Assembly: GCA_001179505.1 (NCBI GenBank)
Contig: CDMY01000305.1
Location: 456,233 to 520,232, forward strand
Length of the DNA: 64,000 bases
Reading direction: 5' to 3'
DNA from: Vitrella brassicaformis CCMP3155
Taxonomy: Eukaryota; Protista; Chromerida
Shown piece by piece: positions 48,725 through 59,733 of this stretch (the stretch's first letter is position 1; every line of letters starts with the position of its first letter). The notes under the pieces are model-generated. The model saw nothing but the letters and a program-made list of their open reading frames with translations. It was not told the origin of the DNA and made no database searches. Position numbers and translations under genes: made by a program.

Positions 48725-51700
48725 AATTCATCCAAAGTGATTGGGGCTCACTGCGGCTGAGTGCTTGGCTTCCGACGAGTCCTGTGAGCCCACAGAAGGG
48801 GTCTTTCCAGCCCTCCTCCCAACTTGCGAGTTGATCGATGCGAGCTGGAGAGAGGGGGGAGAATTCCCGCGGTTAAAGGGTTGGTGCGCCAGTGGAGGCA
48901 CAGTGAGTCCTGCTGATCCACTGGTGGTATTTTACGCCAGTGATCCATCAACGGCGTATATTCATCGCTATCGCCGCATAGCGGCTTCTCGTCCTGACGG
49001 TGAGTCAAGATGCGGCGATTGGTTGCATTCACAAGCACACCATGATGATCTATTCGCTGTCTGGTGTGTTGAAGGTGGTCTTCAGGTCTGCCTTGTCGAC
49101 CGGGCGGACTGTTTGATTGAGCGACAGTGTGGATGGGTATGCAGCTAGCCGTCGACTCATAACTGACAGGTCAGCACTAATTGATGCACACAACACATGC
49201 ACCAGATGCCTGCCCATCTCTTTGTGTGTGTGTGTGGTCCATGGTGCAGCTGAGTGTGGGTGAGAGTGATGTCGTCTGGTCGTCACGACACCGACATGGC
49301 CTCCGCTGGCCCGGCGGACGGTGGCGATGGCGACGAAGGTACACTCAATTCAGACAAATTGCAGCACATCACACACACAGCATCATCGCCAAGCATTACG
49401 CGTGTGGATGTGTGTGTTCCTTTGCAGACGATGTAGCCGAGGAGGAACAGCGTGACGGCAGCGCACAACCAGACGGACCAGATCCCAGTGCTGTTGATAG
49501 TGGTGAGTGACCATCATACCACACACACGAGCGAGCAGCACACTCCCCCGATGGGTGCCTCACTAGGCTCTTTGTGCCTCTGTGCAGGTGGAGGTGTTGG
49601 CAGTATTGGCGAGCGTAGAGGAGTTGGCTTTGGTCGGGCTGGTGTTGGCGGGCAGCAGGGCAGCGGGCAGAGCCGGAGTCAACAGAATGGAGGTACACCG
49701 ACCGACACACAAATCAGTATCGCCTTTCATTGATCATCGTTGACAATCTGTGCAGCCACAGGTCCGTCGCTACCTCCTCGCTGGAAGAGCTACGGGAACG
49801 GCATCGACCTCGCCTTCCCTCCTGGCACCAGTGAAGCAAGCAGACGGCTGTTTGGCATCATAGAGCGCACCATCACTGGCGAAGAGCATATGACGCAGCT
49901 CATCCAGCAGCAGGGAGCCGACCCCAATGTGATGCAGGCGCTGCGGGCGGCGGGCACCACGGGCGGCTATTTCGCCTTTCCTTTGCTGTCGCTGTGCATC
50001 GACAACCTCACGGACAACAGCGTGCCTTCCCTCTGGGCAGCTAATTGCGAGGATGTTGAGACTATGACTTCCGTCGCCTTGTCGACGTGGCGGACCCGCG
50101 ACCTACAGCTCGCCGTCATGCGCACCCTGATCGAGAGCGGTGCCGATATCAACGCGGGCACAAATACCACCTCTTTGCCCATCCGCGTGGCCATCGCCTC
50201 GTGCAACCCGGAGGCATTCGACCTCCTGATGGGCCAGCCAGGTGAACACCCATTCACAGCATTCACGACACGTAAACTCACAGCATGATGTTCGTCGGGA
50301 CGTCTGTCTGCCTCTGTGTCTGTCCCAGGTATCCAGCTGCGGGGGCGTCGGGTGCTGGCGCTGCCGCGCACATTGCCGACGGACCAGCCGACTGAGGAAA
50401 GCGAGCGCACCCTGCTGTCCTTCTACCGGCAGCTCATCCAGCGGGACACCACACTCGCAGCCGAGCGGGACCTGGATGGCAAGAATCCGATGCATTGGGC
50501 AGCCTGCAGACATCCCGTCTGGTCCCAGCAGTTCATCGAGAGCTACATCGACCTGCTGGTGGCCAATGGGGCGGACGTCACGGCCGTGGACAAACTGGGG
50601 TTGTCACCATTGCATTTCGCGGCCTTCAATGGTTCCCGCTGTGTGGCTGCCTCTCTCTGCCGCCGCCTCGCCGCTGCCGACATCAACAGAGGGCTCCCGA
50701 ATGACCGCACCAGCACACCCCTCACCGTCGCTGCCATACGGCTCCATTTGGACACCCAACAGCTGCAGGACGACACCACGGGGCGGGCCGAGAGGGACCG
50801 CCTCACCGTCCGGATCCCCCACGTCAAGACCACCATCCGTGTGCTCTTCCAGGCGGGCGCTGACATCGCCCTCATGCTCACAGCCACAGAGTGGCACCGC
50901 GGCGGTCGCCAGCTGGTGCTGCCCGAGTACGCGACAGTGCTCAACGACCTGCCGGATGACGTCATGGCTGCCATCAACGCCGCCCTCGCCCCTCAGCGGT
51001 CGCTCGCAGCCTTGCTCGGCCCCCGGCTGGTCGTCGGCCCGCAGGAGGCCCCCATCTTCGCCTGGCGCATCGCATCATACCTCTTCGACATGGAGGCCGC
51101 CATCCAGACCATCACTGACAAATTCCCCTTCCGGCACTCCGCCATGGCCCGGCGTGTGCGTGCGGCTGTCGAGCATTCCGTCCGCTCGTCAGTGTACGAG
51201 GCCAGCAGCAACAGGGAGGTGGTGGGCGGGATGGCCAATGTGGGCGGCGAGATGGTGCGGGTGCCGCTGCAGTGCTTCGCCATCAATGCGGGACAGCAGG
51301 GGGGCGGGCAGCACCAGCTGCTGGGTGTGCGTGAGGTGGTGCACAGGGCTCGGCTGGACGAGGCGGCCCAGCATGGCGTGACGGGAGTTGTCAAGGGCTT
51401 CAACGAGCACTTGGGCAATGACGACTGCCAGTTCCAGTGGCAGCAGCTGGGGTGCGTCGAGAGGGGCCGGGACGGCGGAGCGACCTTCAGACCGCTGCAG
51501 CTGACGTGAGATGTGTGAGCGAGGCACGTAGCCACATGGATGGATGGATGGATGGATGAGGGTGAGGGGCAGGCAGACGGGCGGGCAGGTTTTGATGTGC
51601 GCATGACCAGGTTGGTGTCGCTGCCTCACTCGCTGCTTCTCCGGTGTGGGTGGACGGCCAAATGGGAGGCAGGCAGGCCAGCAGATGGACAGACAGGCAC

Positions 51701-52555: not shown

Positions 52556-52855
52556 NNNNNNNNNNNNNNNNNNNNNNNNNNNNNNNNNNNNNNNNNNNNN
52601 NNNNNNNNNNNNNNNNNNNNNNNNNNNNNNNNNNNNNNNNNNNNNNNNNNNNNNNNNNNNNNNNNNNNNNNNNNNNNNNNNNNNNNNNNNNNNNNNNNNN
52701 NNNNNNNNNNNNNNNNNNNNNNNNNNNNNNNNNNNNNNNNNNNNNNNNNNNNNNNNNNNNNNNNNNNNNNNNNNNNNNNNNNNNNNNNNNNNNNNNNNNN
52801 NNNNNNNNNNNNNNNNNNNNNNNNNNNNNNNNNNNNNNNNNNNNNNNNNNNNNNN
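52556..52855. other. Assembly gap (300 N) flanked by poly-G
   Basis: N run, intergenic. Confidence 0.99.
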
Positions 52856-53141: not shown

Positions 53142-54001
53142 TCAGCACGCAACGGCCGCCCGATGCAGGTCAGCAAGTCGACCATTGCAGTTGATAGCGG
53201 CCGCAGAAGCAATGACTCGCCCCCTCCAACTGGCTGCATACACGCCATCACAGACATAGCCACCAATCGTGCGCAGGACAGCATGTGACACCTTACTAGT
53301 AGTCGCCGATCAAGGAGGAGGGAGCCCCCAACATGTTGCCGCCTGCTTCCTTCTCGAAGGCGTGCATCTGTTCTAGTATGTCGCCGCGAGTGATGCCCTT
53401 GGACTGACGACATTCACACAGACTCTTGCACATCACAGATCGATGGCAGTGGTCGTCTCACCGGATCTGATGCCCTGATGGCCAGCGTGTCGGCCGGGTA
53501 GGGGAAGTCGCTGGTTTCGTTGAACGCCATCTCGGACACGATCTCGAAATCCTCTGCGTGCATGGGCATCCATAATCATCAGGCAACAATGAGGTGAAGT
53601 TGAGTGGACTGACTTGGTTTGAGCTCCGGGTGACCATTGTCCAGCGATCCTGCGCTCGTGATGATGACCGATGGAAAAGGGTACACAATCTCCCGCATCC
53701 GCCTGTCGTGCTTCTTCCGCTCCTCCTCGTCCATCTCGGCCAGCAGCTCCTTCATCTCCTCCGAGTCACCGAGGCCTTCAAGGTCGATGAAGTCGGGCTC
53801 ATTCGCACGCCGCTGACCCTTGACCTCATTCAACACCTCCTTCAAGCGCTTCTGCACAAGCACAAGAGGAGATAAGAAGCGGCGAACGAACGATACTCTC
53901 CACTGGGTCGGGCTCACTTCGTAGTCGGCTCTGACTCTCTCCTCGCGAATCCTGGCCTCCCTCAGGAGGGCGGCACGAGTTTCATGAGTTTCGGAACTCA
54001 T
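53142..54001 (-). CDS. Small hypothetical protein (~200 aa, 5 exons)
   Basis: Phase-consistent splicing gives MSSETHETRAALLREARIREERVRADYE|KRLKEVLNEVK...PELKP|KDFEIVSEMAF...RASDP|SKGITRGDILEQMHAFEKE...LIGDYY|QLEGRV...AVAC*. Confidence 0.55.
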
Positions 54002-54361
54002 GCCTCTCCGACCGGCCTGTTTCCAGCAGCGGATCTGCGAGCTTGAAGCAGATCTGACACAGCCGCCACAAAGTGCGTCTGACACAGCGGGCACGACCAC
54101 ACAGACGCCACGAGCATCGCTGACGTCGCTGGTAGACAGATCTGCTGGAATCTCGACACATATGCTGATGATATGCATCTGGCCGATGCGCTTGCCGTGC
54201 TTGCAGGGAGGGAGCGTGCAGACGCACGAAGAATGGAGAGATCTACCTTCCCGCCAGCTCACGAGCATCGCTGACACCGTTGGTACGCAGATTTGCTTCA
54301 CGCGCTGCGAATGTGATCGGGGTGTGTGTGTGTGTGTGATTGCGTTGTACTGCAGGCCGAG

Positions 54362-55507
54362 ATGTCGCAGCCATCGCCCCGAGTCTTGACGCTCGACGAA
54401 GCAGGCAACCAGCTCATCGAGACGGAGCGACAGCTCAAGAACGAAAGATGGCGTGCGACCATGGATATGCGGCTCACGGCTCTCGAGCACCAGCACCAGA
54501 TGGAAGGGCTACAAGTACAGCTGGCAGCCCGCGACGCATCACTGGCAGAGAAGGACAAGCAGCTCCTCAGTGCCCAGGCGGCCGCCAAGGCCGTACAGCA
54601 ATCGACGTCTGTGGGTGCGGGCCTGCTATCTGTCGCTGTCCATGTGCTGCTGGCCGTGGCGCTCATCGGTGTGGTGGCTGTGTCCATGGGATGGTGGGAG
54701 GCTGCTGAGGGCCTCGTGTGCGCCAAGCGAGAGGCGGCTATCGATGACAAGCTCAGAGCGCTTCTGACGGAGAAGGACAAGCAGCTGACCGAAGCGAGAG
54801 AGGCTCACGAGAGGCGACTGGCCGACAGGACGGGCGAGATTGTGGCACTGAAAGGGCAGCTCGCAGACCGGGAGGCGGCCATCGAAACACTCCAACAGAA
54901 GGTGGATGGACCCATCACGCACATGCCTTGGTCTTCTACACCCCCAGCCCCTACGTATGTATGTATGTATGTGTCGGCAGAGCCTCTCGCTCGATGTGAC
55001 TCCCCTCTCGCTCGGGTCAGCAGAGGGCGAGTTAGGCACTTTCATGCGCATCGTGGCAAGAAACACGACCATCCCCATCAAGAAATCGAGAATCCACATG
55101 ACTGTCGTCGACAACCAGGCAATGGTGAAAGGCGAGAGACGGTGTGAAACCCACGCCCAGCTCTGTATGTGCATCTCTCTCATCGATTGTAGATACTCTT
55201 CAAAGTATACGAGGGCGAGAAGCCGATGGCTGAGGACAACCATCTGCTTGGCGAGTTGCTCTTCACCGGCATCCCCCGCGCCCCCAAAGGCAAGGGCAGG
55301 GTCGAGCTGACCTTCGAGATTGACGCCAACGGTATCCTGACCATCGTTGCAACGGAGGAATCCACCGGACACACACAGGTTGGTCGCCTAAGAAGACAGC
55401 ACCACAAAGCATCCGTGACATATCCGTTATATCAGAGCATCACGATTGTGTCGAGTGCGGTCAAGACCCTGGTCGACATCAAAAGAATGGTGCGGCAAAG
55501 CGAATGA
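54362..55507 (+). CDS. Coiled-coil / single TM / coiled-coil protein fused to an isolated Hsp70 substrate-binding beta domain (no ATPase domain, lid truncated)
   Basis: Exon to 54900 (heptads, TM ~54611-54696) splices in phase 0 to [12 protein letters not shown]...[10 protein letters not shown]...DNQAM|[62 protein letters not shown]|[23 protein letters not shown]. Upstream exons from ~54000 are possible. Confidence 0.8.
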
Positions 55508-55944
55508 GCAGATGTTCATGTGTATGTCTGTCGAGCTGCTCATTCGTCTCGTGAATGACGAGTGAGAGTTGCATGCCTGCATCCTTTTTATGCATTTATT
55601 GGTGCCTTCCATTGGCCGTATATTACGATTGCCATGGCGTACGGACGTAAGTGAGGGTAGGTGGGTGCGTGGGGCTGTCGTTTCTATCTGTAAAGTAATT
55701 TTGTCGTCATGTGTGTGAAGTGTTTTCTGTGCTTGCTGCGTGTTTTGTGGACAAGGACAGCCGACCGGCTGTGGATGTGCTTCTGCAAGGGACCGGATGT
55801 CAAGTGCACGTGTGTATCCATGTGTCCAAATGCCCAGTCGACACACACGTCACACTATCATCACAGACACACACGTTCATGCGTGAGTGGTTGAGGTGAC
55901 GAGATCCATCGATCCATCCAGCAGCACCAACATGTGATTTTGTT

Positions 55945-58757
55945 CACACGGCTAGTCACCCGTCTCTAGCTATTGACATGCAGGCAGGCAGGCAGGCAGG
56001 CAGAGAGGCAGCAGCTGAGCCATCCACCATCGCATTCACCTCAGTTACACCCGACTGGATGGGTGCCAGTAGGTGAACACATTATGAGAATGAATCGCAC
56101 GGACTCACCGGTGCCTGTCTGTCCATCTGCTGGCCTGCCTGCCTCCCATTTGGCCGTCCACCCACACCGGAGAAGCAGCGAGTGAGGAAGCGACACCAAC
56201 CTAGTCATGCAAACATCAAAACCTGCCCGCCCGTCTGGCTGTCCATCCCCCTCATCCATCCATCCATCCGTCCATCCATCCATGTAGCTACGTGCCCCGC
56301 TCGCTCATCTCACGTCAGCTGCAGCGGTGTGAAGGTCGCTCTGCCGTCCCGGCCCCTCTCGACGCACCCCAGCTGCTGCCACTGGAACTGGCAGTCGTCA
56401 TCCCCCAGATGCTCGTTGAAGCCCTTGACCAGCCCCGCCACGCCATGCTGCGCCACCTCGTCCAGCCGCGCCCTGTGCACCACCTCACGCACACCCAGCA
56501 GCCGGTGCTGCCCGCCCTGCTGTCCCGCATTGATGGCGAAGCACTGCAGCGGCACCCGCACCATCTCGCCGCCCACATTGGCCATCTCGCCCACCACCTC
56601 CCTGTTGCTGCTGGCCTCGTACACTGACGAGCGGACGGAATGCTCGACAGCCGCACGCACACGCCGGGCCATGGCGGAGTGGCGGGAGGGGATGGACCCA
56701 GTGATGGTCTGGGTGGCGGCCGCCATGTCGAAGAGGTACGATGCGATGCGCCAGGCGAAGATGGGGGCCTCCTGCGGGCCGACGACCAGCCGGGGGGCGA
56801 GCAAGGCCGCAAGCGACCGCTGAGGGGCGAGGGCGGCGTTGATGGCAGCCATGACGTCATCCGGCAGATTGTTGAGTACTGTCGCGTACTCGGGCAGCAC
56901 CAGCTGGCGACGACGGCGGTCCTCCTCTGTGGCAGTGAGCATGAGGGCGATGTCAGCGCCCGCCTGGAGCAGCACACGGATGGTGGTCTTGACGTGGGGG
57001 ATCCGGACGGTGAGGCGGTCCCTCACGGCCTGCCCCGTGTTGTCTTCCTGCAGCTGTTGGATGTCCTCATCGAGCCGTTCGGCAGCGACGGTGAGGGGTG
57101 TGTAGGTGGGGTCATTCGGGGTCCCTCTGTTGATGTCGGCAGCGGTGAGACGCCGACACAGAGAGGCAGCGACACGGTGGGAGCCGCAGGGGCAGAGTGC
57201 CGCGAAGTGCAATGGCGTGCGTCCACCCATCATGTCCACGGCCGTGATGTCGGCCCCGTTGGCCACCAGCAGGTCGATGTAGCTCTCGATGAACTGCTGG
57301 GACCAGACGGGAGGTCTCAGGGCCGCACTATGCAGCAGATTCATGCCACCCAGGTCCCGCTCGGTTGCGAGTGTGGTGTCACGCTGGATGAGCTGTCGGT
57401 AGAAGGACAGCAGGATGGCCTCGTGAGCCTCAGTGGGCTGGTCCGTCGGCAATGTGCGCACCTGCATCGCCGCCTCCCGTCCGCGCAGCTGGATGCCTGG
57501 AACAGGCAGACAGACAGAAAGACAGACAGACAGACATCATGATGTGTGTTCCGTGTCGTGAGTGCTGTGAATGGGTGTGCACCTGGGTGGCCCATCAGCA
57601 GGTTGAAGGCGGCCCGGTTGCACGACGCGAGGGCCACCCGGATGGGTCTAGACAAATGGCTACCGCCATTGATGCCCGCCCCTCTCTGGATGAGAGCACG
57701 CATGACGGCGAGCTGGAGTCCTGGCGTCTCCCACGTGGGCATGGCGACGGGAGAGGCGTCACCGCAGTCGCCTGCCCAGATGGACGGCAGACTGTTGTCC
57801 GTGAGATTGTCGATGCACAGCGCCACCAGCGGGTAGGCTTGATAGCGACCCGTGGTGCCCGTCACCCGCAGCAGTGGCTCCACGTTGAGGTCGGCTCCCT
57901 TCTGCTGAATCAGCTGCGTCACCTGCTGTGCGTCAGTGATGGTGCGGCGAATGATGGATTCGGACAGCTGTCTGCTGGCGTAACTGGTGCCAAGAGGGAA
58001 GCGGACGTCGACGACCCCCTCCTTCAAGCTATTCCAGCCAGATGGTAACGGCGCACCTGGTGGGACAGCGTCCACAGGGGAGGGTGGTATGTGTGTTGGT
58101 GGTGGGTGATTTGCTGACCTATCTCCGGTCTGTCGGCCCTGCCGGCTGCCCTGCTGCCCATCGGATCCGTCACCATCGATACCAGCACCGATAGCACGAT
58201 CCCCACCAGCACTACTTACGCCCCCTCCGAGGCAGGACAGGGGCGGCGGGTGATGCGCATGGCCGCTCAGCGTCAGACCAGTGGATGGAAGGACACCAAC
58301 ACCAGCAGCAGGATGGGGAGCGGGGGGACGCTGCACACACCATCCACAACACAACACAATTCACAACACAACCATGCCATCATCGTGTCCTGGTGCTGAC
58401 TGAGGGGCAGAGGAGGCATGCAATCACCTGTGGCTGTTGGGCACTGGGCAGGTTGGCGGCGGGCTGGTGCCTTTGGCTGTCTCCCTTGGCCCTCTTGTGC
58501 TCCTCACGCTCCAGAGGAGAGCCGGCACGCTTCACAACACCTACACCTACACCTTCACACACATACACACACGACCCAGACAATGATGACGTGCTGCGTC
58601 AGGCTGGCTGTGGTGCATTCATTGACTACCTGTATAGCTGGATGACGATGCTGCTGCTTGTGGCCCATCCACCGCCCTTGCCTTGAGATGAATGGCCTGC
58701 CGTTTACCGCGGCGGGACAACCGATGACACACACACGTACCGGAGAGTGGGTGAAGG

Positions 58758-58789
<32 letters not shown>

Positions 58790-59733
58790 GCGGTGCTCTC
58801 GTTCGTTGGCGTACCGGCGATGGCATGTGAGAGGGCTCTGTCATGGAGGCGTTGTTCCTCTGCCTCACGACGACATTGTTCACCGCTCCACCGCCCGGAC
58901 GGCCCTCCTGGCGCTCCTCCAGGTCCACTGGGCGCCGCACGTCACCGCCGCCATCTTGCCCTGCACGCTCTAAATCGTTTGCAAAGATGGTGACACACAC
59001 ACACACACACACAACGATGCTGTGTGTGTGACGTGCTGCATATTTGTCTGAGTTGAGTGTACCTTCATCGCCATCGCCACCATCCGCCGGGCCAGCGGAG
59101 GCCATGTCGGTGTCGGGACGACCAGACATCACTCACACACAGATAGAGCTGCACCATGGACCACACAGACACAGAGATGGGCGGCCACCTGGTGTGTGTG
59201 TTGTGTGCATCAGTGCTGTGCTTGCCTATCAAGAGTTGGAGTCGGCGGGCATCTGTACACAAAGCCGCTCAATCAACCAGTCCGCCCGTCGACGAGGCAG
59301 ACCTGCTTGAGACCACCAACACACACAGACAGCAAACAGATCATCCGTCATGGTGTGCTTGTGAGTTATCCAACCGGCGCATGTTCCCACTCACCGTCGG
59401 ACGAGAAGCCGCTATAGCTACGATAATCCATCGGGGCAATACGTAGTGTGGACCCTCGAGATGGATCAGGCACCACGAGAAGCGGCTGATCTTGGGCCGA
59501 GCGGCGGACATACGGACTTCTCTGCTCCGGAGGGCCTCACTGTGCCTCCACTGGCTCACCAAGAGAACCTCGTAAGGACGAAATCGCTCATTCTTCTCCC
59601 CCTCCCTCCCCAGCTCGCATCGATCGGCTCCCGGGTTGGCAGATGAGTGCGAAGGAGCCCTTCTGTGGGCTCACAGGGCTCATCAGGTGCCAATTATTCA
59701 GCCGCAGCGAGCCCCAATTACTTTGGATGAATT
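55945..59733 (-). repeat. Right arm of inverted segmental duplication
   Basis: Reverse complement matches 48725-51890, including the 5' noncoding region, exon 1, ankyrin exons and ~380 bp of 3' flank. Confidence 0.9.
56310..59105 (-). CDS. Ankyrin-repeat protein, lineage-expanded family, copy B (longer low-complexity N-terminus)
   Basis: ATG 59105 (MASAGPADGGDGDE, same as copy A); ankyrin exon ~57487-56310 closely similar to copy A; exon-2 acceptor mutated AG>AA at 58979. Confidence 0.85.

What the first reader, a model, noticed from the sequence alone, without database searches (positions are those of the whole stretch)
54362..55507. Membrane-anchored coiled-coil protein carrying a stand-alone, lidless Hsp70 substrate-binding domain
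Seen: a coiled-coil / hydrophobic TM ([29 protein letters not shown]) / coiled-coil exon is joined in phase 0, at an intron, to sequence starting exactly at the Hsp70 interdomain linker ([11 protein letters not shown]). It continues through the whole SBD-beta ([31 protein letters not shown]) and stops right after lid helix A ([10 protein letters not shown]). No nucleotide-binding domain is encoded nearby. Established: SBD-beta binds extended hydrophobic peptides, and release normally needs the NBD and lid. Inference: exon shuffling created an ATP-independent, membrane-tethered holdase or peptide sensor. I do not know this architecture from any characterised family. The binding-loop motifs look retained rather than decayed.
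Basis: partly seen in the sequence, partly recalled or inferred. Interest (0 to 1): 0.78.

Follow-up and report, generated by a model that had tools for sequence, protein, structure and literature searches.

The report
Membrane-tethered Hsp70 substrate-binding domain, no ATPase
The alga Vitrella brassicaformis transcribes and splices a small gene whose product is only coiled coils, one membrane helix and the peptide-binding beta-sandwich of an Hsp70 chaperone, with no ATP motor and no lid; it belongs to a three-gene family found so far only in this species, and its function is untested.

Summary
Window 54362-55507 (+) is a four-exon CDS with GT..AG, phase-0 introns. They also show two 5'UTR introns. 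No NBD or lid remnant lies anywhere in the 64 kb.

The organism is Vitrella brassicaformis CCMP3155, where the gene is an unnamed protein (CEM01589.1). It has two paralogues on another scaffold:
- Coil + SBD-beta, 174 aa.
- Coil + two tandem SBD-beta, the first broken by a frameshift.

All three share the coil-SBD junction, the intron positions and the C-terminal stop. They form one clade, and pairwise dN/dS is 0.39-0.60. Only this copy has the membrane segment. Each copy lies near related ankyrin genes.

The binding cleft is only partly canonical: loop L1,2 and two pocket residues have changed. My best reading is a coiled-coil, membrane-tethered, ATP-independent peptide-binding adaptor (about 0.4). 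Drift, Hsp70 tethering and a dedicated partner remain open.

First readers of this scan noted related NBD-less SBD genes on other pieces of this genome.

The parts
54035..54130 (+). 5'UTR exon 1. Transcript contigs start at 54035-54047.
   Evidence: Pieces table.
54206..54281 (+). 5'UTR exon 2. It is flanked by GT..AG introns of 75 and 73 nt and holds a 13-codon uORF.
   Evidence: Joints table; mRNA reconstruction.
54355..54901 (+). Exon 3. The CDS starts at 54362 and encodes residues 1-180: helix, hydrophobic segment, helix.
   Evidence: AF2 helices 11-84, 90-109 and 115-180. No Pfam family.
54611..54697 (+). Predicted single transmembrane segment, V84-W112 (29 uncharged residues).
   Evidence: KD19 maximum of 2.73 against a threshold of 1.6. 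Paralogues B and C have no such segment (maximum below 1).
54542..54786 (+). Two copies of a 23-nt direct repeat encoding L-A/T-EKDKQL, 222 nt apart, on either side of the membrane segment. This indicates an internal duplication in exon 1.
54902..54980 (+). Intron between the coiled-coil exon and the SBD exon. It is phase 0, GT..AG, 79 nt, and contains a (GTAT)n run.
   Evidence: (record 719 to 721).
54981..55124 (+). SBD exon a. It encodes the linker end ([12 protein letters not shown]), beta1 to beta3 and the L3,4 DNQ.
   Evidence: Pfam HSP70 profile 387-429; PDB alignment.
55193..55378 (+). SBD exon b, encoding beta4 to beta7.
   Evidence: Pfam HSP70 profile 433-492, E 1.5e-14.
55436..55507 (+). 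SBD exon c. It encodes beta8, the family tail [10 protein letters not shown], about 12 residues of helix A, and the stop at 55505-55507.
55508..55962 (+). 3'UTR of about 455 nt, unspliced, with no lid remnant.
   Evidence: Contig length and pieces; tblastn.

Best explanation
This is a real, spliced, transcribed gene of Vitrella brassicaformis (CEM01589.1). Its product has four parts:
- An N-terminal helical, coiled-coil-like arm.
- One membrane-spanning helix.
- A second helical arm.
- An Hsp70 SBD-beta sandwich that ends early in lid helix A.

It is the membrane-bearing member of a Vitrella-restricted family. In that family a three-exon, phase-0 SBD-beta module sits directly behind a coiled coil, with no ATPase domain.

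Most likely mechanism (inferred, not shown): the helical arms oligomerise and the hydrophobic helix anchors the complex in a membrane. The open, lidless cleft then binds extended peptide segments without ATP and with fast on/off kinetics. This would make the protein a membrane-localised adaptor, receptor or holdase. Its specificity is shifted from the canonical Leu-centred motif, because loop L1,2 and two pocket residues differ.

Flank charges and the long N-terminal arm weakly favour N-in / SBD-out (lumenal or exoplasmic) topology.
For: Shown:
- Gene model and splicing, with an identical MMETSP ORF.
- SBD-beta identity by Pfam, by PDB sequence search (Hsc70 SBD, E 4e-33), by AF2 (SBD pLDDT above 90) and by Foldseek (TM by target up to 0.78 to SBD-only chains).
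- No NBD in the 64 kb.
- Paralogues B and C share the coil-SBD junction, three phase-0 intron positions and the C-terminal tail.
- The family is one clade, support 100/99.
- dN/dS for A against B1, B2 and C is 0.45, 0.50 and 0.39, and no bootstrap replicate reached 1.
- A keeps 43 of 61 near-invariant Hsp70 positions.
- The hydrophobic segment has KD 2.73.

Established elsewhere:
- Isolated human Hsp70 SBD constructs bind the NR peptide without nucleotide, Kd about 8 uM (PMC3696110).
- Lid-truncated BiP and DnaK crystallise with intact SBD-beta (7a4u and 5obu).
Against: - No direct evidence exists for protein, membrane insertion, oligomerisation or peptide binding.
- dN/dS of 0.4-0.5 is high for an Hsp70 domain.
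- Paralogue B carries a frameshift in its first SBD, in both genome and transcript, so the family tolerates loss.
- In A, the strand-1 and L1,2 residues are replaced and F426 is His. Classical substrate binding may therefore be weak or lost.
- The family was found in one species only.
- The topology call rests on a flank charge difference of +1 against -1.
Confidence: 0.42

Rival explanations
1. The gene is a young, lineage-specific chimeric gene that is transcribed but has little or no function. It would be one product of birth-and-death turnover of duplicated SBD fragments and is drifting.
For: - The family is restricted to Vitrella in an exhaustive phmmer search, a profile search and a metagenome scan.
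- dN/dS is 0.39-0.60.
- Paralogue B has lost one CT unit in a CT run and is frameshifted, yet it is still transcribed.
- Pocket and L1,2 residues are non-canonical in A.
- The copies sit in segmentally duplicated ankyrin-gene neighbourhoods.
Against: - Bootstrap intervals for A against each paralogue exclude omega = 1.
- The reading frame, three splice sites and the stop position are preserved across copies that differ at dS 0.7-1.0.
- A keeps 70% of near-invariant Hsp70 positions.
- The transcript was assembled in four runs from three studies.
Confidence: 0.2
2. The protein is an Hsp70-system tether or regulator. Either the free SBD-beta cleft captures the hydrophobic interdomain linker of a canonical Hsp70, or its own linker end plus SBD-beta docks on an ATPase domain supplied in trans (a 'split Hsp70'). 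Either way chaperone activity would be placed at a membrane.
For: - Linker-into-SBD engagement between protomers is documented for BiP oligomers (PMC4608358 abstract). A linker-SBD interaction is documented for human Hsp70 (PMC3696110).
- A retains positions that in DnaK face the NBD or carry allostery, numbered from the literature: D393 (D185), K414 (R207), N415 (N208), P419 (P212) and L484 (L277).
- VTPLSLG is invariant in all copies.
Against: - The Leu-rich linker motif is weakened to SLSL.
- The retained residues may simply be structural.
- No NBD-only partner gene was seen in the window or in L002.
- If the SBD faces the lumen, cytosolic Hsp70 is out of reach.
Confidence: 0.15
3. The SBD-beta has become a dedicated protein-protein interaction module with its own specific partner. 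It would form part of a lineage-specific system together with the neighbouring ankyrin(-RING) genes, and it would no longer act as a general binder of unfolded peptides.
For: - Loop L1,2 is hypervariable in length between copies (8, 7, 11 and 23 residues), while the scaffold strands are conserved.
- Each of the three family genes lies near related ankyrin genes. In L002 these are Ank-RING or Ank followed by B, and Ank followed by C. In the window, homologous Ank copies lie at 49855-51017 (+) and 56451-59125 (-).
- Unchecked first-reader notes report ART-SBD-SUMO-like fusions elsewhere in this genome.
Against: - The linkage may only reflect segmental duplication.
- In the window an unrelated minus-strand gene and an assembly gap lie between the upstream Ank gene and gene A.
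- There is no co-expression or interaction evidence.
- I did not verify the ART/SUMO notes.
Confidence: 0.2

Closest known systems
Canonical Hsp70/DnaK substrate-binding domain beta (C-terminal part of Pfam PF00012; e.g. rat Hsc70 SBD 1ckr/7hsc, DnaK SBD 1dkx)
   Same: Both have the eight-stranded beta-sandwich. Sequence identity is 43-51%. The VTPLSLG, NTTIP, DNQ, VYEGE and IDANGIL motifs are kept, as are 43 of 61 near-invariant positions.
   Different: The window protein has no ATPase domain, no lid beyond about 12 residues of helix A, and no EEVD or KDEL tail. A coiled coil and a membrane helix take the place of the NBD. The GIET-x-GG strand and loop are replaced, and F426 is His.
Vitrella paralogues CEM12032.1 (B, coil + 2 x SBD-beta) and P0277 (C, 174 aa, coil + SBD-beta) on scaffold CDMY01000431
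   Same: They share the coil-to-SBD junction, three phase-0 introns and the C-terminal tail SA.K..VDI followed by a stop. The SBDs are 49-56% identical, and the copies form one clade.
   Different: Neither paralogue has the long N-terminal arm or the membrane segment. B has a tandem module and a frameshift. C has a 23-residue L1,2 loop and lacks DNQ.
Engineered isolated or lid-truncated SBD constructs (human Hsp70 SBD variants, PMC3696110; lid-truncated BiP 7a4u/7a4v; M. genitalium DnaK lacking SBD-alpha 5obu)
   Same: They show that SBD-beta is stable without the lid or NBD and that the SBD binds peptide without nucleotide.
   Different: Those constructs are laboratory truncations of full chaperones. 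This is a natural gene with its own promoter, introns and paralogues.
Bacterial NBD-less tandem SBD-beta proteins with a lipoprotein-like or signal-like N-terminus (P0131, P0141; metagenomic, unnamed)
   Same: They are natural proteins that carry SBD-beta without an ATPase domain and are apparently exported or membrane-attached.
   Different: They are not specially related to the window protein: about 37% identity, scoring below canonical Hsp70 per domain. They have no coiled coil, and one retains a lid-like tail.

Membership tests
Hsp70/DnaK chaperone (full-length, PF00012) | Actin-like N-terminal nucleotide-binding domain | tested here: not met
   The Pfam match covers only profile positions 387-492. 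tblastn of an NBD against the whole window gave only hits with E > 0.6. The mRNA has in-frame stops upstream of the ATG. NCBIfam DnaK scores are 130 bits against cut-offs of 650-1000.
Hsp70/DnaK chaperone (full-length, PF00012) | Leu-rich hydrophobic interdomain linker (VLLL/DLLLLDV) | tested here: inconclusive
   The sequence is K-SLSL-DV. The three near-invariant Leu positions read L, S, L (two kept, the middle one Ser), and D393 is kept.
Hsp70/DnaK chaperone (full-length, PF00012) | Eight-stranded SBD-beta sandwich | tested here: met
   AF2 predicts eight strands at pLDDT above 90. Foldseek matches Hsp70 SBDs at E 1e-14, with TM by target up to 0.78. The PDB sequence search gives E 4e-33.
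Hsp70/DnaK chaperone (full-length, PF00012) | Alpha-helical lid (helices A-E) and C-terminal EEVD/KDEL-type tail | tested here: not met
   The stop comes after about 12 residues of helix A. The unspliced 3'UTR has no lid-like coding remnant.
Hsp70/DnaK chaperone (full-length, PF00012) | Canonical substrate cleft residues (DnaK I401, T403, M404/A429 arch, F426, V436, I438, I472) | tested here: inconclusive
   By alignment the equivalents are Ser/Ala, Gly, Glu/Val, His, Ile, Phe and Val. The cleft is partly hydrophobic and partly changed. Binding itself cannot be tested with these tools.
Vitrella coil + SBD-beta 'mini-Hsp70' family (A, B, C) | Coiled coil abutting VTPLSLG at a phase-0 intron; a three-exon phase-0 module; the tail SA.K..VDI and then a stop | tested here: met
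Vitrella coil + SBD-beta 'mini-Hsp70' family (A, B, C) | Monophyly of the SBDs against canonical Hsp70 SBDs | tested here: met
   IQ-TREE support is 100/99 for A+B1+B2+C. Branches are long, and the sister group is unresolved.
Single-pass membrane protein | One hydrophobic helix of about 20 or more uncharged residues; actual insertion and topology | tested here: inconclusive
   The segment is 29 uncharged residues with KD19 of 2.73, and AF2 predicts a helix at 90-109 with low pLDDT. Insertion and orientation cannot be tested here. Flank charges are +1 (N side) and -1 (C side).

The most novel reading that the evidence does not exclude
In Vitrella the Hsp70 SBD-beta has escaped from the chaperone and become a mobile, phase-0 exon module. 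It would serve ATP-independent recognition of linear peptides. The module is deployed behind coiled coils, in tandem, on a membrane anchor (this gene) and, according to unchecked notes on this genome, in ADP-ribosyltransferase/SUMO-like fusions. It sits next to ankyrin-RING genes. Together these would form a lineage-specific protein-surveillance or conflict system in which this gene is the membrane-bound sensor arm.
Probability: 0.15. Interest if true: 0.8.

Novelty: new variant of a known kind. Interest (0 to 1): 0.55.

Why it matters
Hsp70 biology assumes that the peptide-binding domain works only under control of its ATPase and lid. A natural, expressed family of ATPase-less, lidless SBD-beta proteins would show that evolution can reuse this domain as a stand-alone peptide-recognition module. 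One member of that family is membrane-anchored. The gene also offers a ready-made natural minimal SBD for studying nucleotide-independent binding.

The value is limited for now by three things:
- The family is restricted to one alga.
- Selection on the domain is only moderate.
- No protein-level data exist.

Tried and rejected
1. Hidden NBD or lid: tblastn of Hsp70 NBD and lid sequences against all 64 kb found nothing. The 5' exons of the mRNA add no coding sequence.
2. Mis-modelled gene: rejected. The transcript contigs and the MMETSP ORF agree with the model. The NCBI model's 10 extra N-terminal residues lie inside what the transcripts remove as a 5'UTR intron.
3. Wider family:
   - The hits that outscored canonical Hsp70 in the exhaustive search (P0123-P0136) are tandem or mis-fused full Hsp70s, or kinase/TIR fusions that keep the NBD. 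They are not relatives of this architecture.
   - The family-profile search found only A, B and C above the canonical fragments.
   - The metagenome scan returned only canonical Hsp70 loci, and none matched the N-terminal patterns.
   - The ESM Atlas searches by features and by fold gave nothing beyond Hsp70.
4. Origin of the SBD (cytosolic, ER or organellar type): unresolved. PDB scores are close (Hsc70 117, BiP 115, mortalin 113, DnaK 97-111 bits), and the tree places the family on a long stem outside both the DnaK-type and the eukaryotic cytosolic groups.
5. Exon 1 identity: Pfam gave only sub-threshold hits.
6. Literature: four searches found no description of natural NBD-less SBD proteins or of this Vitrella family.
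7. First alignment attempt: A1 was poor and was replaced by A2.

Full report
**Observation**

The region reads as a four-exon CDS on the + strand: 54362-54901, 54981-55124, 55193-55378 and 55436-55507. All introns are GT..AG and phase 0, and the product is 313 aa.

Pfam HSP70 matches exon 2 (profile 387-429, E 1e-6) and exon 3 (433-492, E 1.5e-14). Exon 1 matches no family above threshold.

The hydrophobic stretch is V84-W112 (nt 54611-54697). It has 29 uncharged residues and a Kyte-Doolittle 19-residue maximum of 2.73.

**Expression and splicing**

Eleven public runs hold half or more of the sampled words. Those holding about 0.72 lack exactly the intronic words.

I laid four of those runs (X8-X11, three studies) on 53900-55900. 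Contigs of up to 1576 nt skip:
- 54131-54205 and 54282-54354, two 5'UTR introns.
- 54902-54980. The joint row was dropped at a GTAT repeat, but the pieces table shows record position 719 at 54901 and record position 721 at 54982.
- 55125-55192.
- 55379-55435.

The contigs then run unspliced to about 55962.

The reconstructed mRNA has in-frame stops upstream of the ATG at 54362 and one short uORF.

A word search with exon 1 returned a 313-aa MMETSP ORF (P0001) identical to my model. Its cluster mate is CEM01589.1 / A0A0G4ETF4 of Vitrella brassicaformis CCMP3155, annotated only as an unnamed or uncharacterised protein. The NCBI model has 10 extra N-terminal residues. They lie in what the transcripts remove as an intron.

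**No ATPase, no lid**

tblastn with an Hsp70 fragment and with a full-length Hsp70 against all 64 kb hits only exons 2 and 3. NBD hits have E > 0.6.

The immediate upstream neighbour is a minus-strand gene. Its ATG is at 54001, and its transcript contigs end at 54023-54027. That is about 10 nt from the start of this gene's contigs, so the two genes are head to head.

**Fold**

AF2 was run with a 72-row alignment and gave mean pLDDT 81.5:
- Helices at 11-84, 90-109 (low confidence) and 115-180.
- Eight strands between 191 and 294, at pLDDT above 90.
- A terminal helix at 302-312.

Foldseek finds Hsp70 SBDs, with E about 1e-14 and TM by target up to 0.78 for SBD-beta-only chains. PDB sequence hits are led by the Hsc70 SBD (E 4e-33). 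BiP, mortalin and DnaK follow closely.

**A family, not an orphan**

A search with the SBD part found one protein far above all canonical fragments: P0003, at 204 bits against 123 or less. It is the Vitrella gene CEM12032.1, which I call B.

The genomic locus of B (L002, scaffold CDMY01000431) also holds a third gene, which I call C (P0277, 174 aa).

| Gene | Architecture | Notes |
|---|---|---|
| A (this window) | Helix, membrane segment, helix, SBD-beta | Only copy with the long N-terminal arm and the membrane segment |
| B | Coil + two tandem SBD-beta modules | First module frameshifted |
| C | Short coil + SBD-beta | 23-residue L1,2 loop; lacks DNQ |

The first module of B has lost one CT unit of a CT run. 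The resulting frameshift is present in both the genome and the transcript.

All three genes share these features:
- A coiled coil abutting VTPLSLG at a phase-0 intron.
- Two further phase-0 introns at the same positions.
- A tail SA.K..VDI followed by a stop early in helix A.

The module is therefore symmetric, phase 0 at both ends. This fits its tandem duplication in B and is what exon shuffling requires. However, the coil-SBD fusion predates gene A.

Only A has the long N-terminal arm and the membrane segment. Exon 1 carries a 23-nt direct repeat (EKDKQL motif) on both sides of that segment, which suggests an internal duplication.

**Constraint**

Pairwise NG86 dN/dS over the SBD is 0.39-0.60, at dS 0.5-1.0. 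For A against B1, B2 and C, no bootstrap replicate reached 1.

Of 61 positions that are at least 90% conserved in 65 canonical SBDs, the copies keep these numbers:

| Copy | Positions kept |
|---|---|
| A | 43 |
| B2 | 37 |
| C | 35 |
| B1 | 30 |

The four SBDs form one clade (100/99) on long branches. Their sister group is unresolved. Selection is therefore purifying on average but much weaker than on Hsp70 proper.

**The cleft**

I mapped residues by alignment, with DnaK numbering taken from the literature:

| DnaK position | Residue in A |
|---|---|
| I401 | Ser/Ala |
| T403 | Gly |
| M404 | Glu |
| G405 | Leu |
| F426 | His219 |
| V436 | Ile |
| I438 | Phe |
| I472 | Val |
| Q433 | Kept |

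- B2 and C keep a fully hydrophobic pocket.
- L1,2 differs in length in every copy: 8, 7, 11 and 23 residues.
- R445 and R467 vary among the copies. From memory, these residues contact the lid in DnaK; this is a lead, not a test.

**Neighbourhood**

In L002, ankyrin(-RING) genes precede both B and C.

In the window, homologues of those ankyrin genes lie at 49855-51017 (+) and 56451-59125 (-), flanking gene A in inverted orientation.

First-reader notes from this scan report the same cassette, the tandem SBD gene, the mini-Hsp70, and ART-SBD-SUMO-like fusions on other pieces of this genome. I verified the first three through L002. I did not verify the ART fusions.

**Distribution**

Three searches looked for relatives outside Vitrella:
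- An exhaustive phmmer search of 1.84 billion representatives.
- A family-profile word search.
- A metagenome scan.

In the phmmer and profile searches only Vitrella A, B and C rank above canonical Hsp70; the metagenome scan returned canonical Hsp70 loci only. Other high scorers are tandem or fused full Hsp70s.

Two metagenomic bacterial proteins (P0131, P0141) are NBD-less tandem SBD-beta proteins with signal-like or lipoprotein-like N-termini. Stand-alone SBDs therefore exist elsewhere, but these are not close relatives.

I found no paper describing such proteins.

**Mechanism**

Shown here: the gene, its mRNA, the fold, the family and average purifying selection.

Established elsewhere: isolated SBD constructs bind peptide without nucleotide (PMC3696110).

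Inferred: the helical arms oligomerise, the hydrophobic helix spans a membrane, and the open cleft binds extended peptides with fast exchange and an altered preference. Flank charges of +1 and -1 and the long N-terminal arm weakly favour the SBD on the exoplasmic or lumenal side.

I rate this reading at about 0.4. The rivals are:
- Drift of a young chimeric gene, 0.2.
- A tether or regulator of canonical Hsp70, through linker capture or trans docking, 0.15.
- A dedicated interaction module working with the linked ankyrin(-RING) genes, 0.2.

**Verdict**

- Novelty: a new variant of a known kind. The Hsp70 SBD-beta appears in a natural architecture that lacks the NBD and lid and is membrane-anchored. 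The gene is already in databases but is undescribed.
- Interest: 0.55.

Noticed in passing
window 53579-54027 (-): A spliced minus-strand gene lies head to head with the SBD gene. Its ATG is at 54001, it has an intron ending at 53917, and it has no Pfam family. The two sets of transcript contigs end about 10 nt apart, which suggests a very compact bidirectional promoter.
   Followed up: partly
window 49855-51017 (+) and 56451-59125 (-): Two ankyrin-repeat genes flank the SBD gene in inverted orientation. They are 60-80% identical at protein level to the ankyrin(-RING) genes that precede paralogues B and C on scaffold CDMY01000431.
   Followed up: partly
L002 10176-10311 (exon 2 of paralogue B): The exon is 136 nt instead of a multiple of three. 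One CT unit is missing from the CT run that encodes PLSLG, so the first SBD module is frameshifted. The same sequence is in the transcript assembly L001. The NCBI model CEM12032.1 avoids the problem by skipping this exon.
   Followed up: yes
P0131 and P0141 (metagenomic proteins): These are bacterial-looking proteins with a signal-like or lipoprotein-like N-terminus followed by two tandem Hsp70 SBD-beta domains and no ATPase domain. They are a separate, undescribed class of NBD-less SBD proteins.
   Followed up: no
window 54131-54354: The 5'UTR carries two short introns and a 13-codon uORF. The NCBI gene model places its start codon (MHLADALAAE...) inside the first of these introns.
   Followed up: yes
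window 41254, 42688, 46646, 52556, 60325: There are five runs of exactly 300 N (scaffold gaps). The gap at 52556-52855 lies between the upstream ankyrin gene and the SBD gene, so gene content there is unknown.
   Followed up: no
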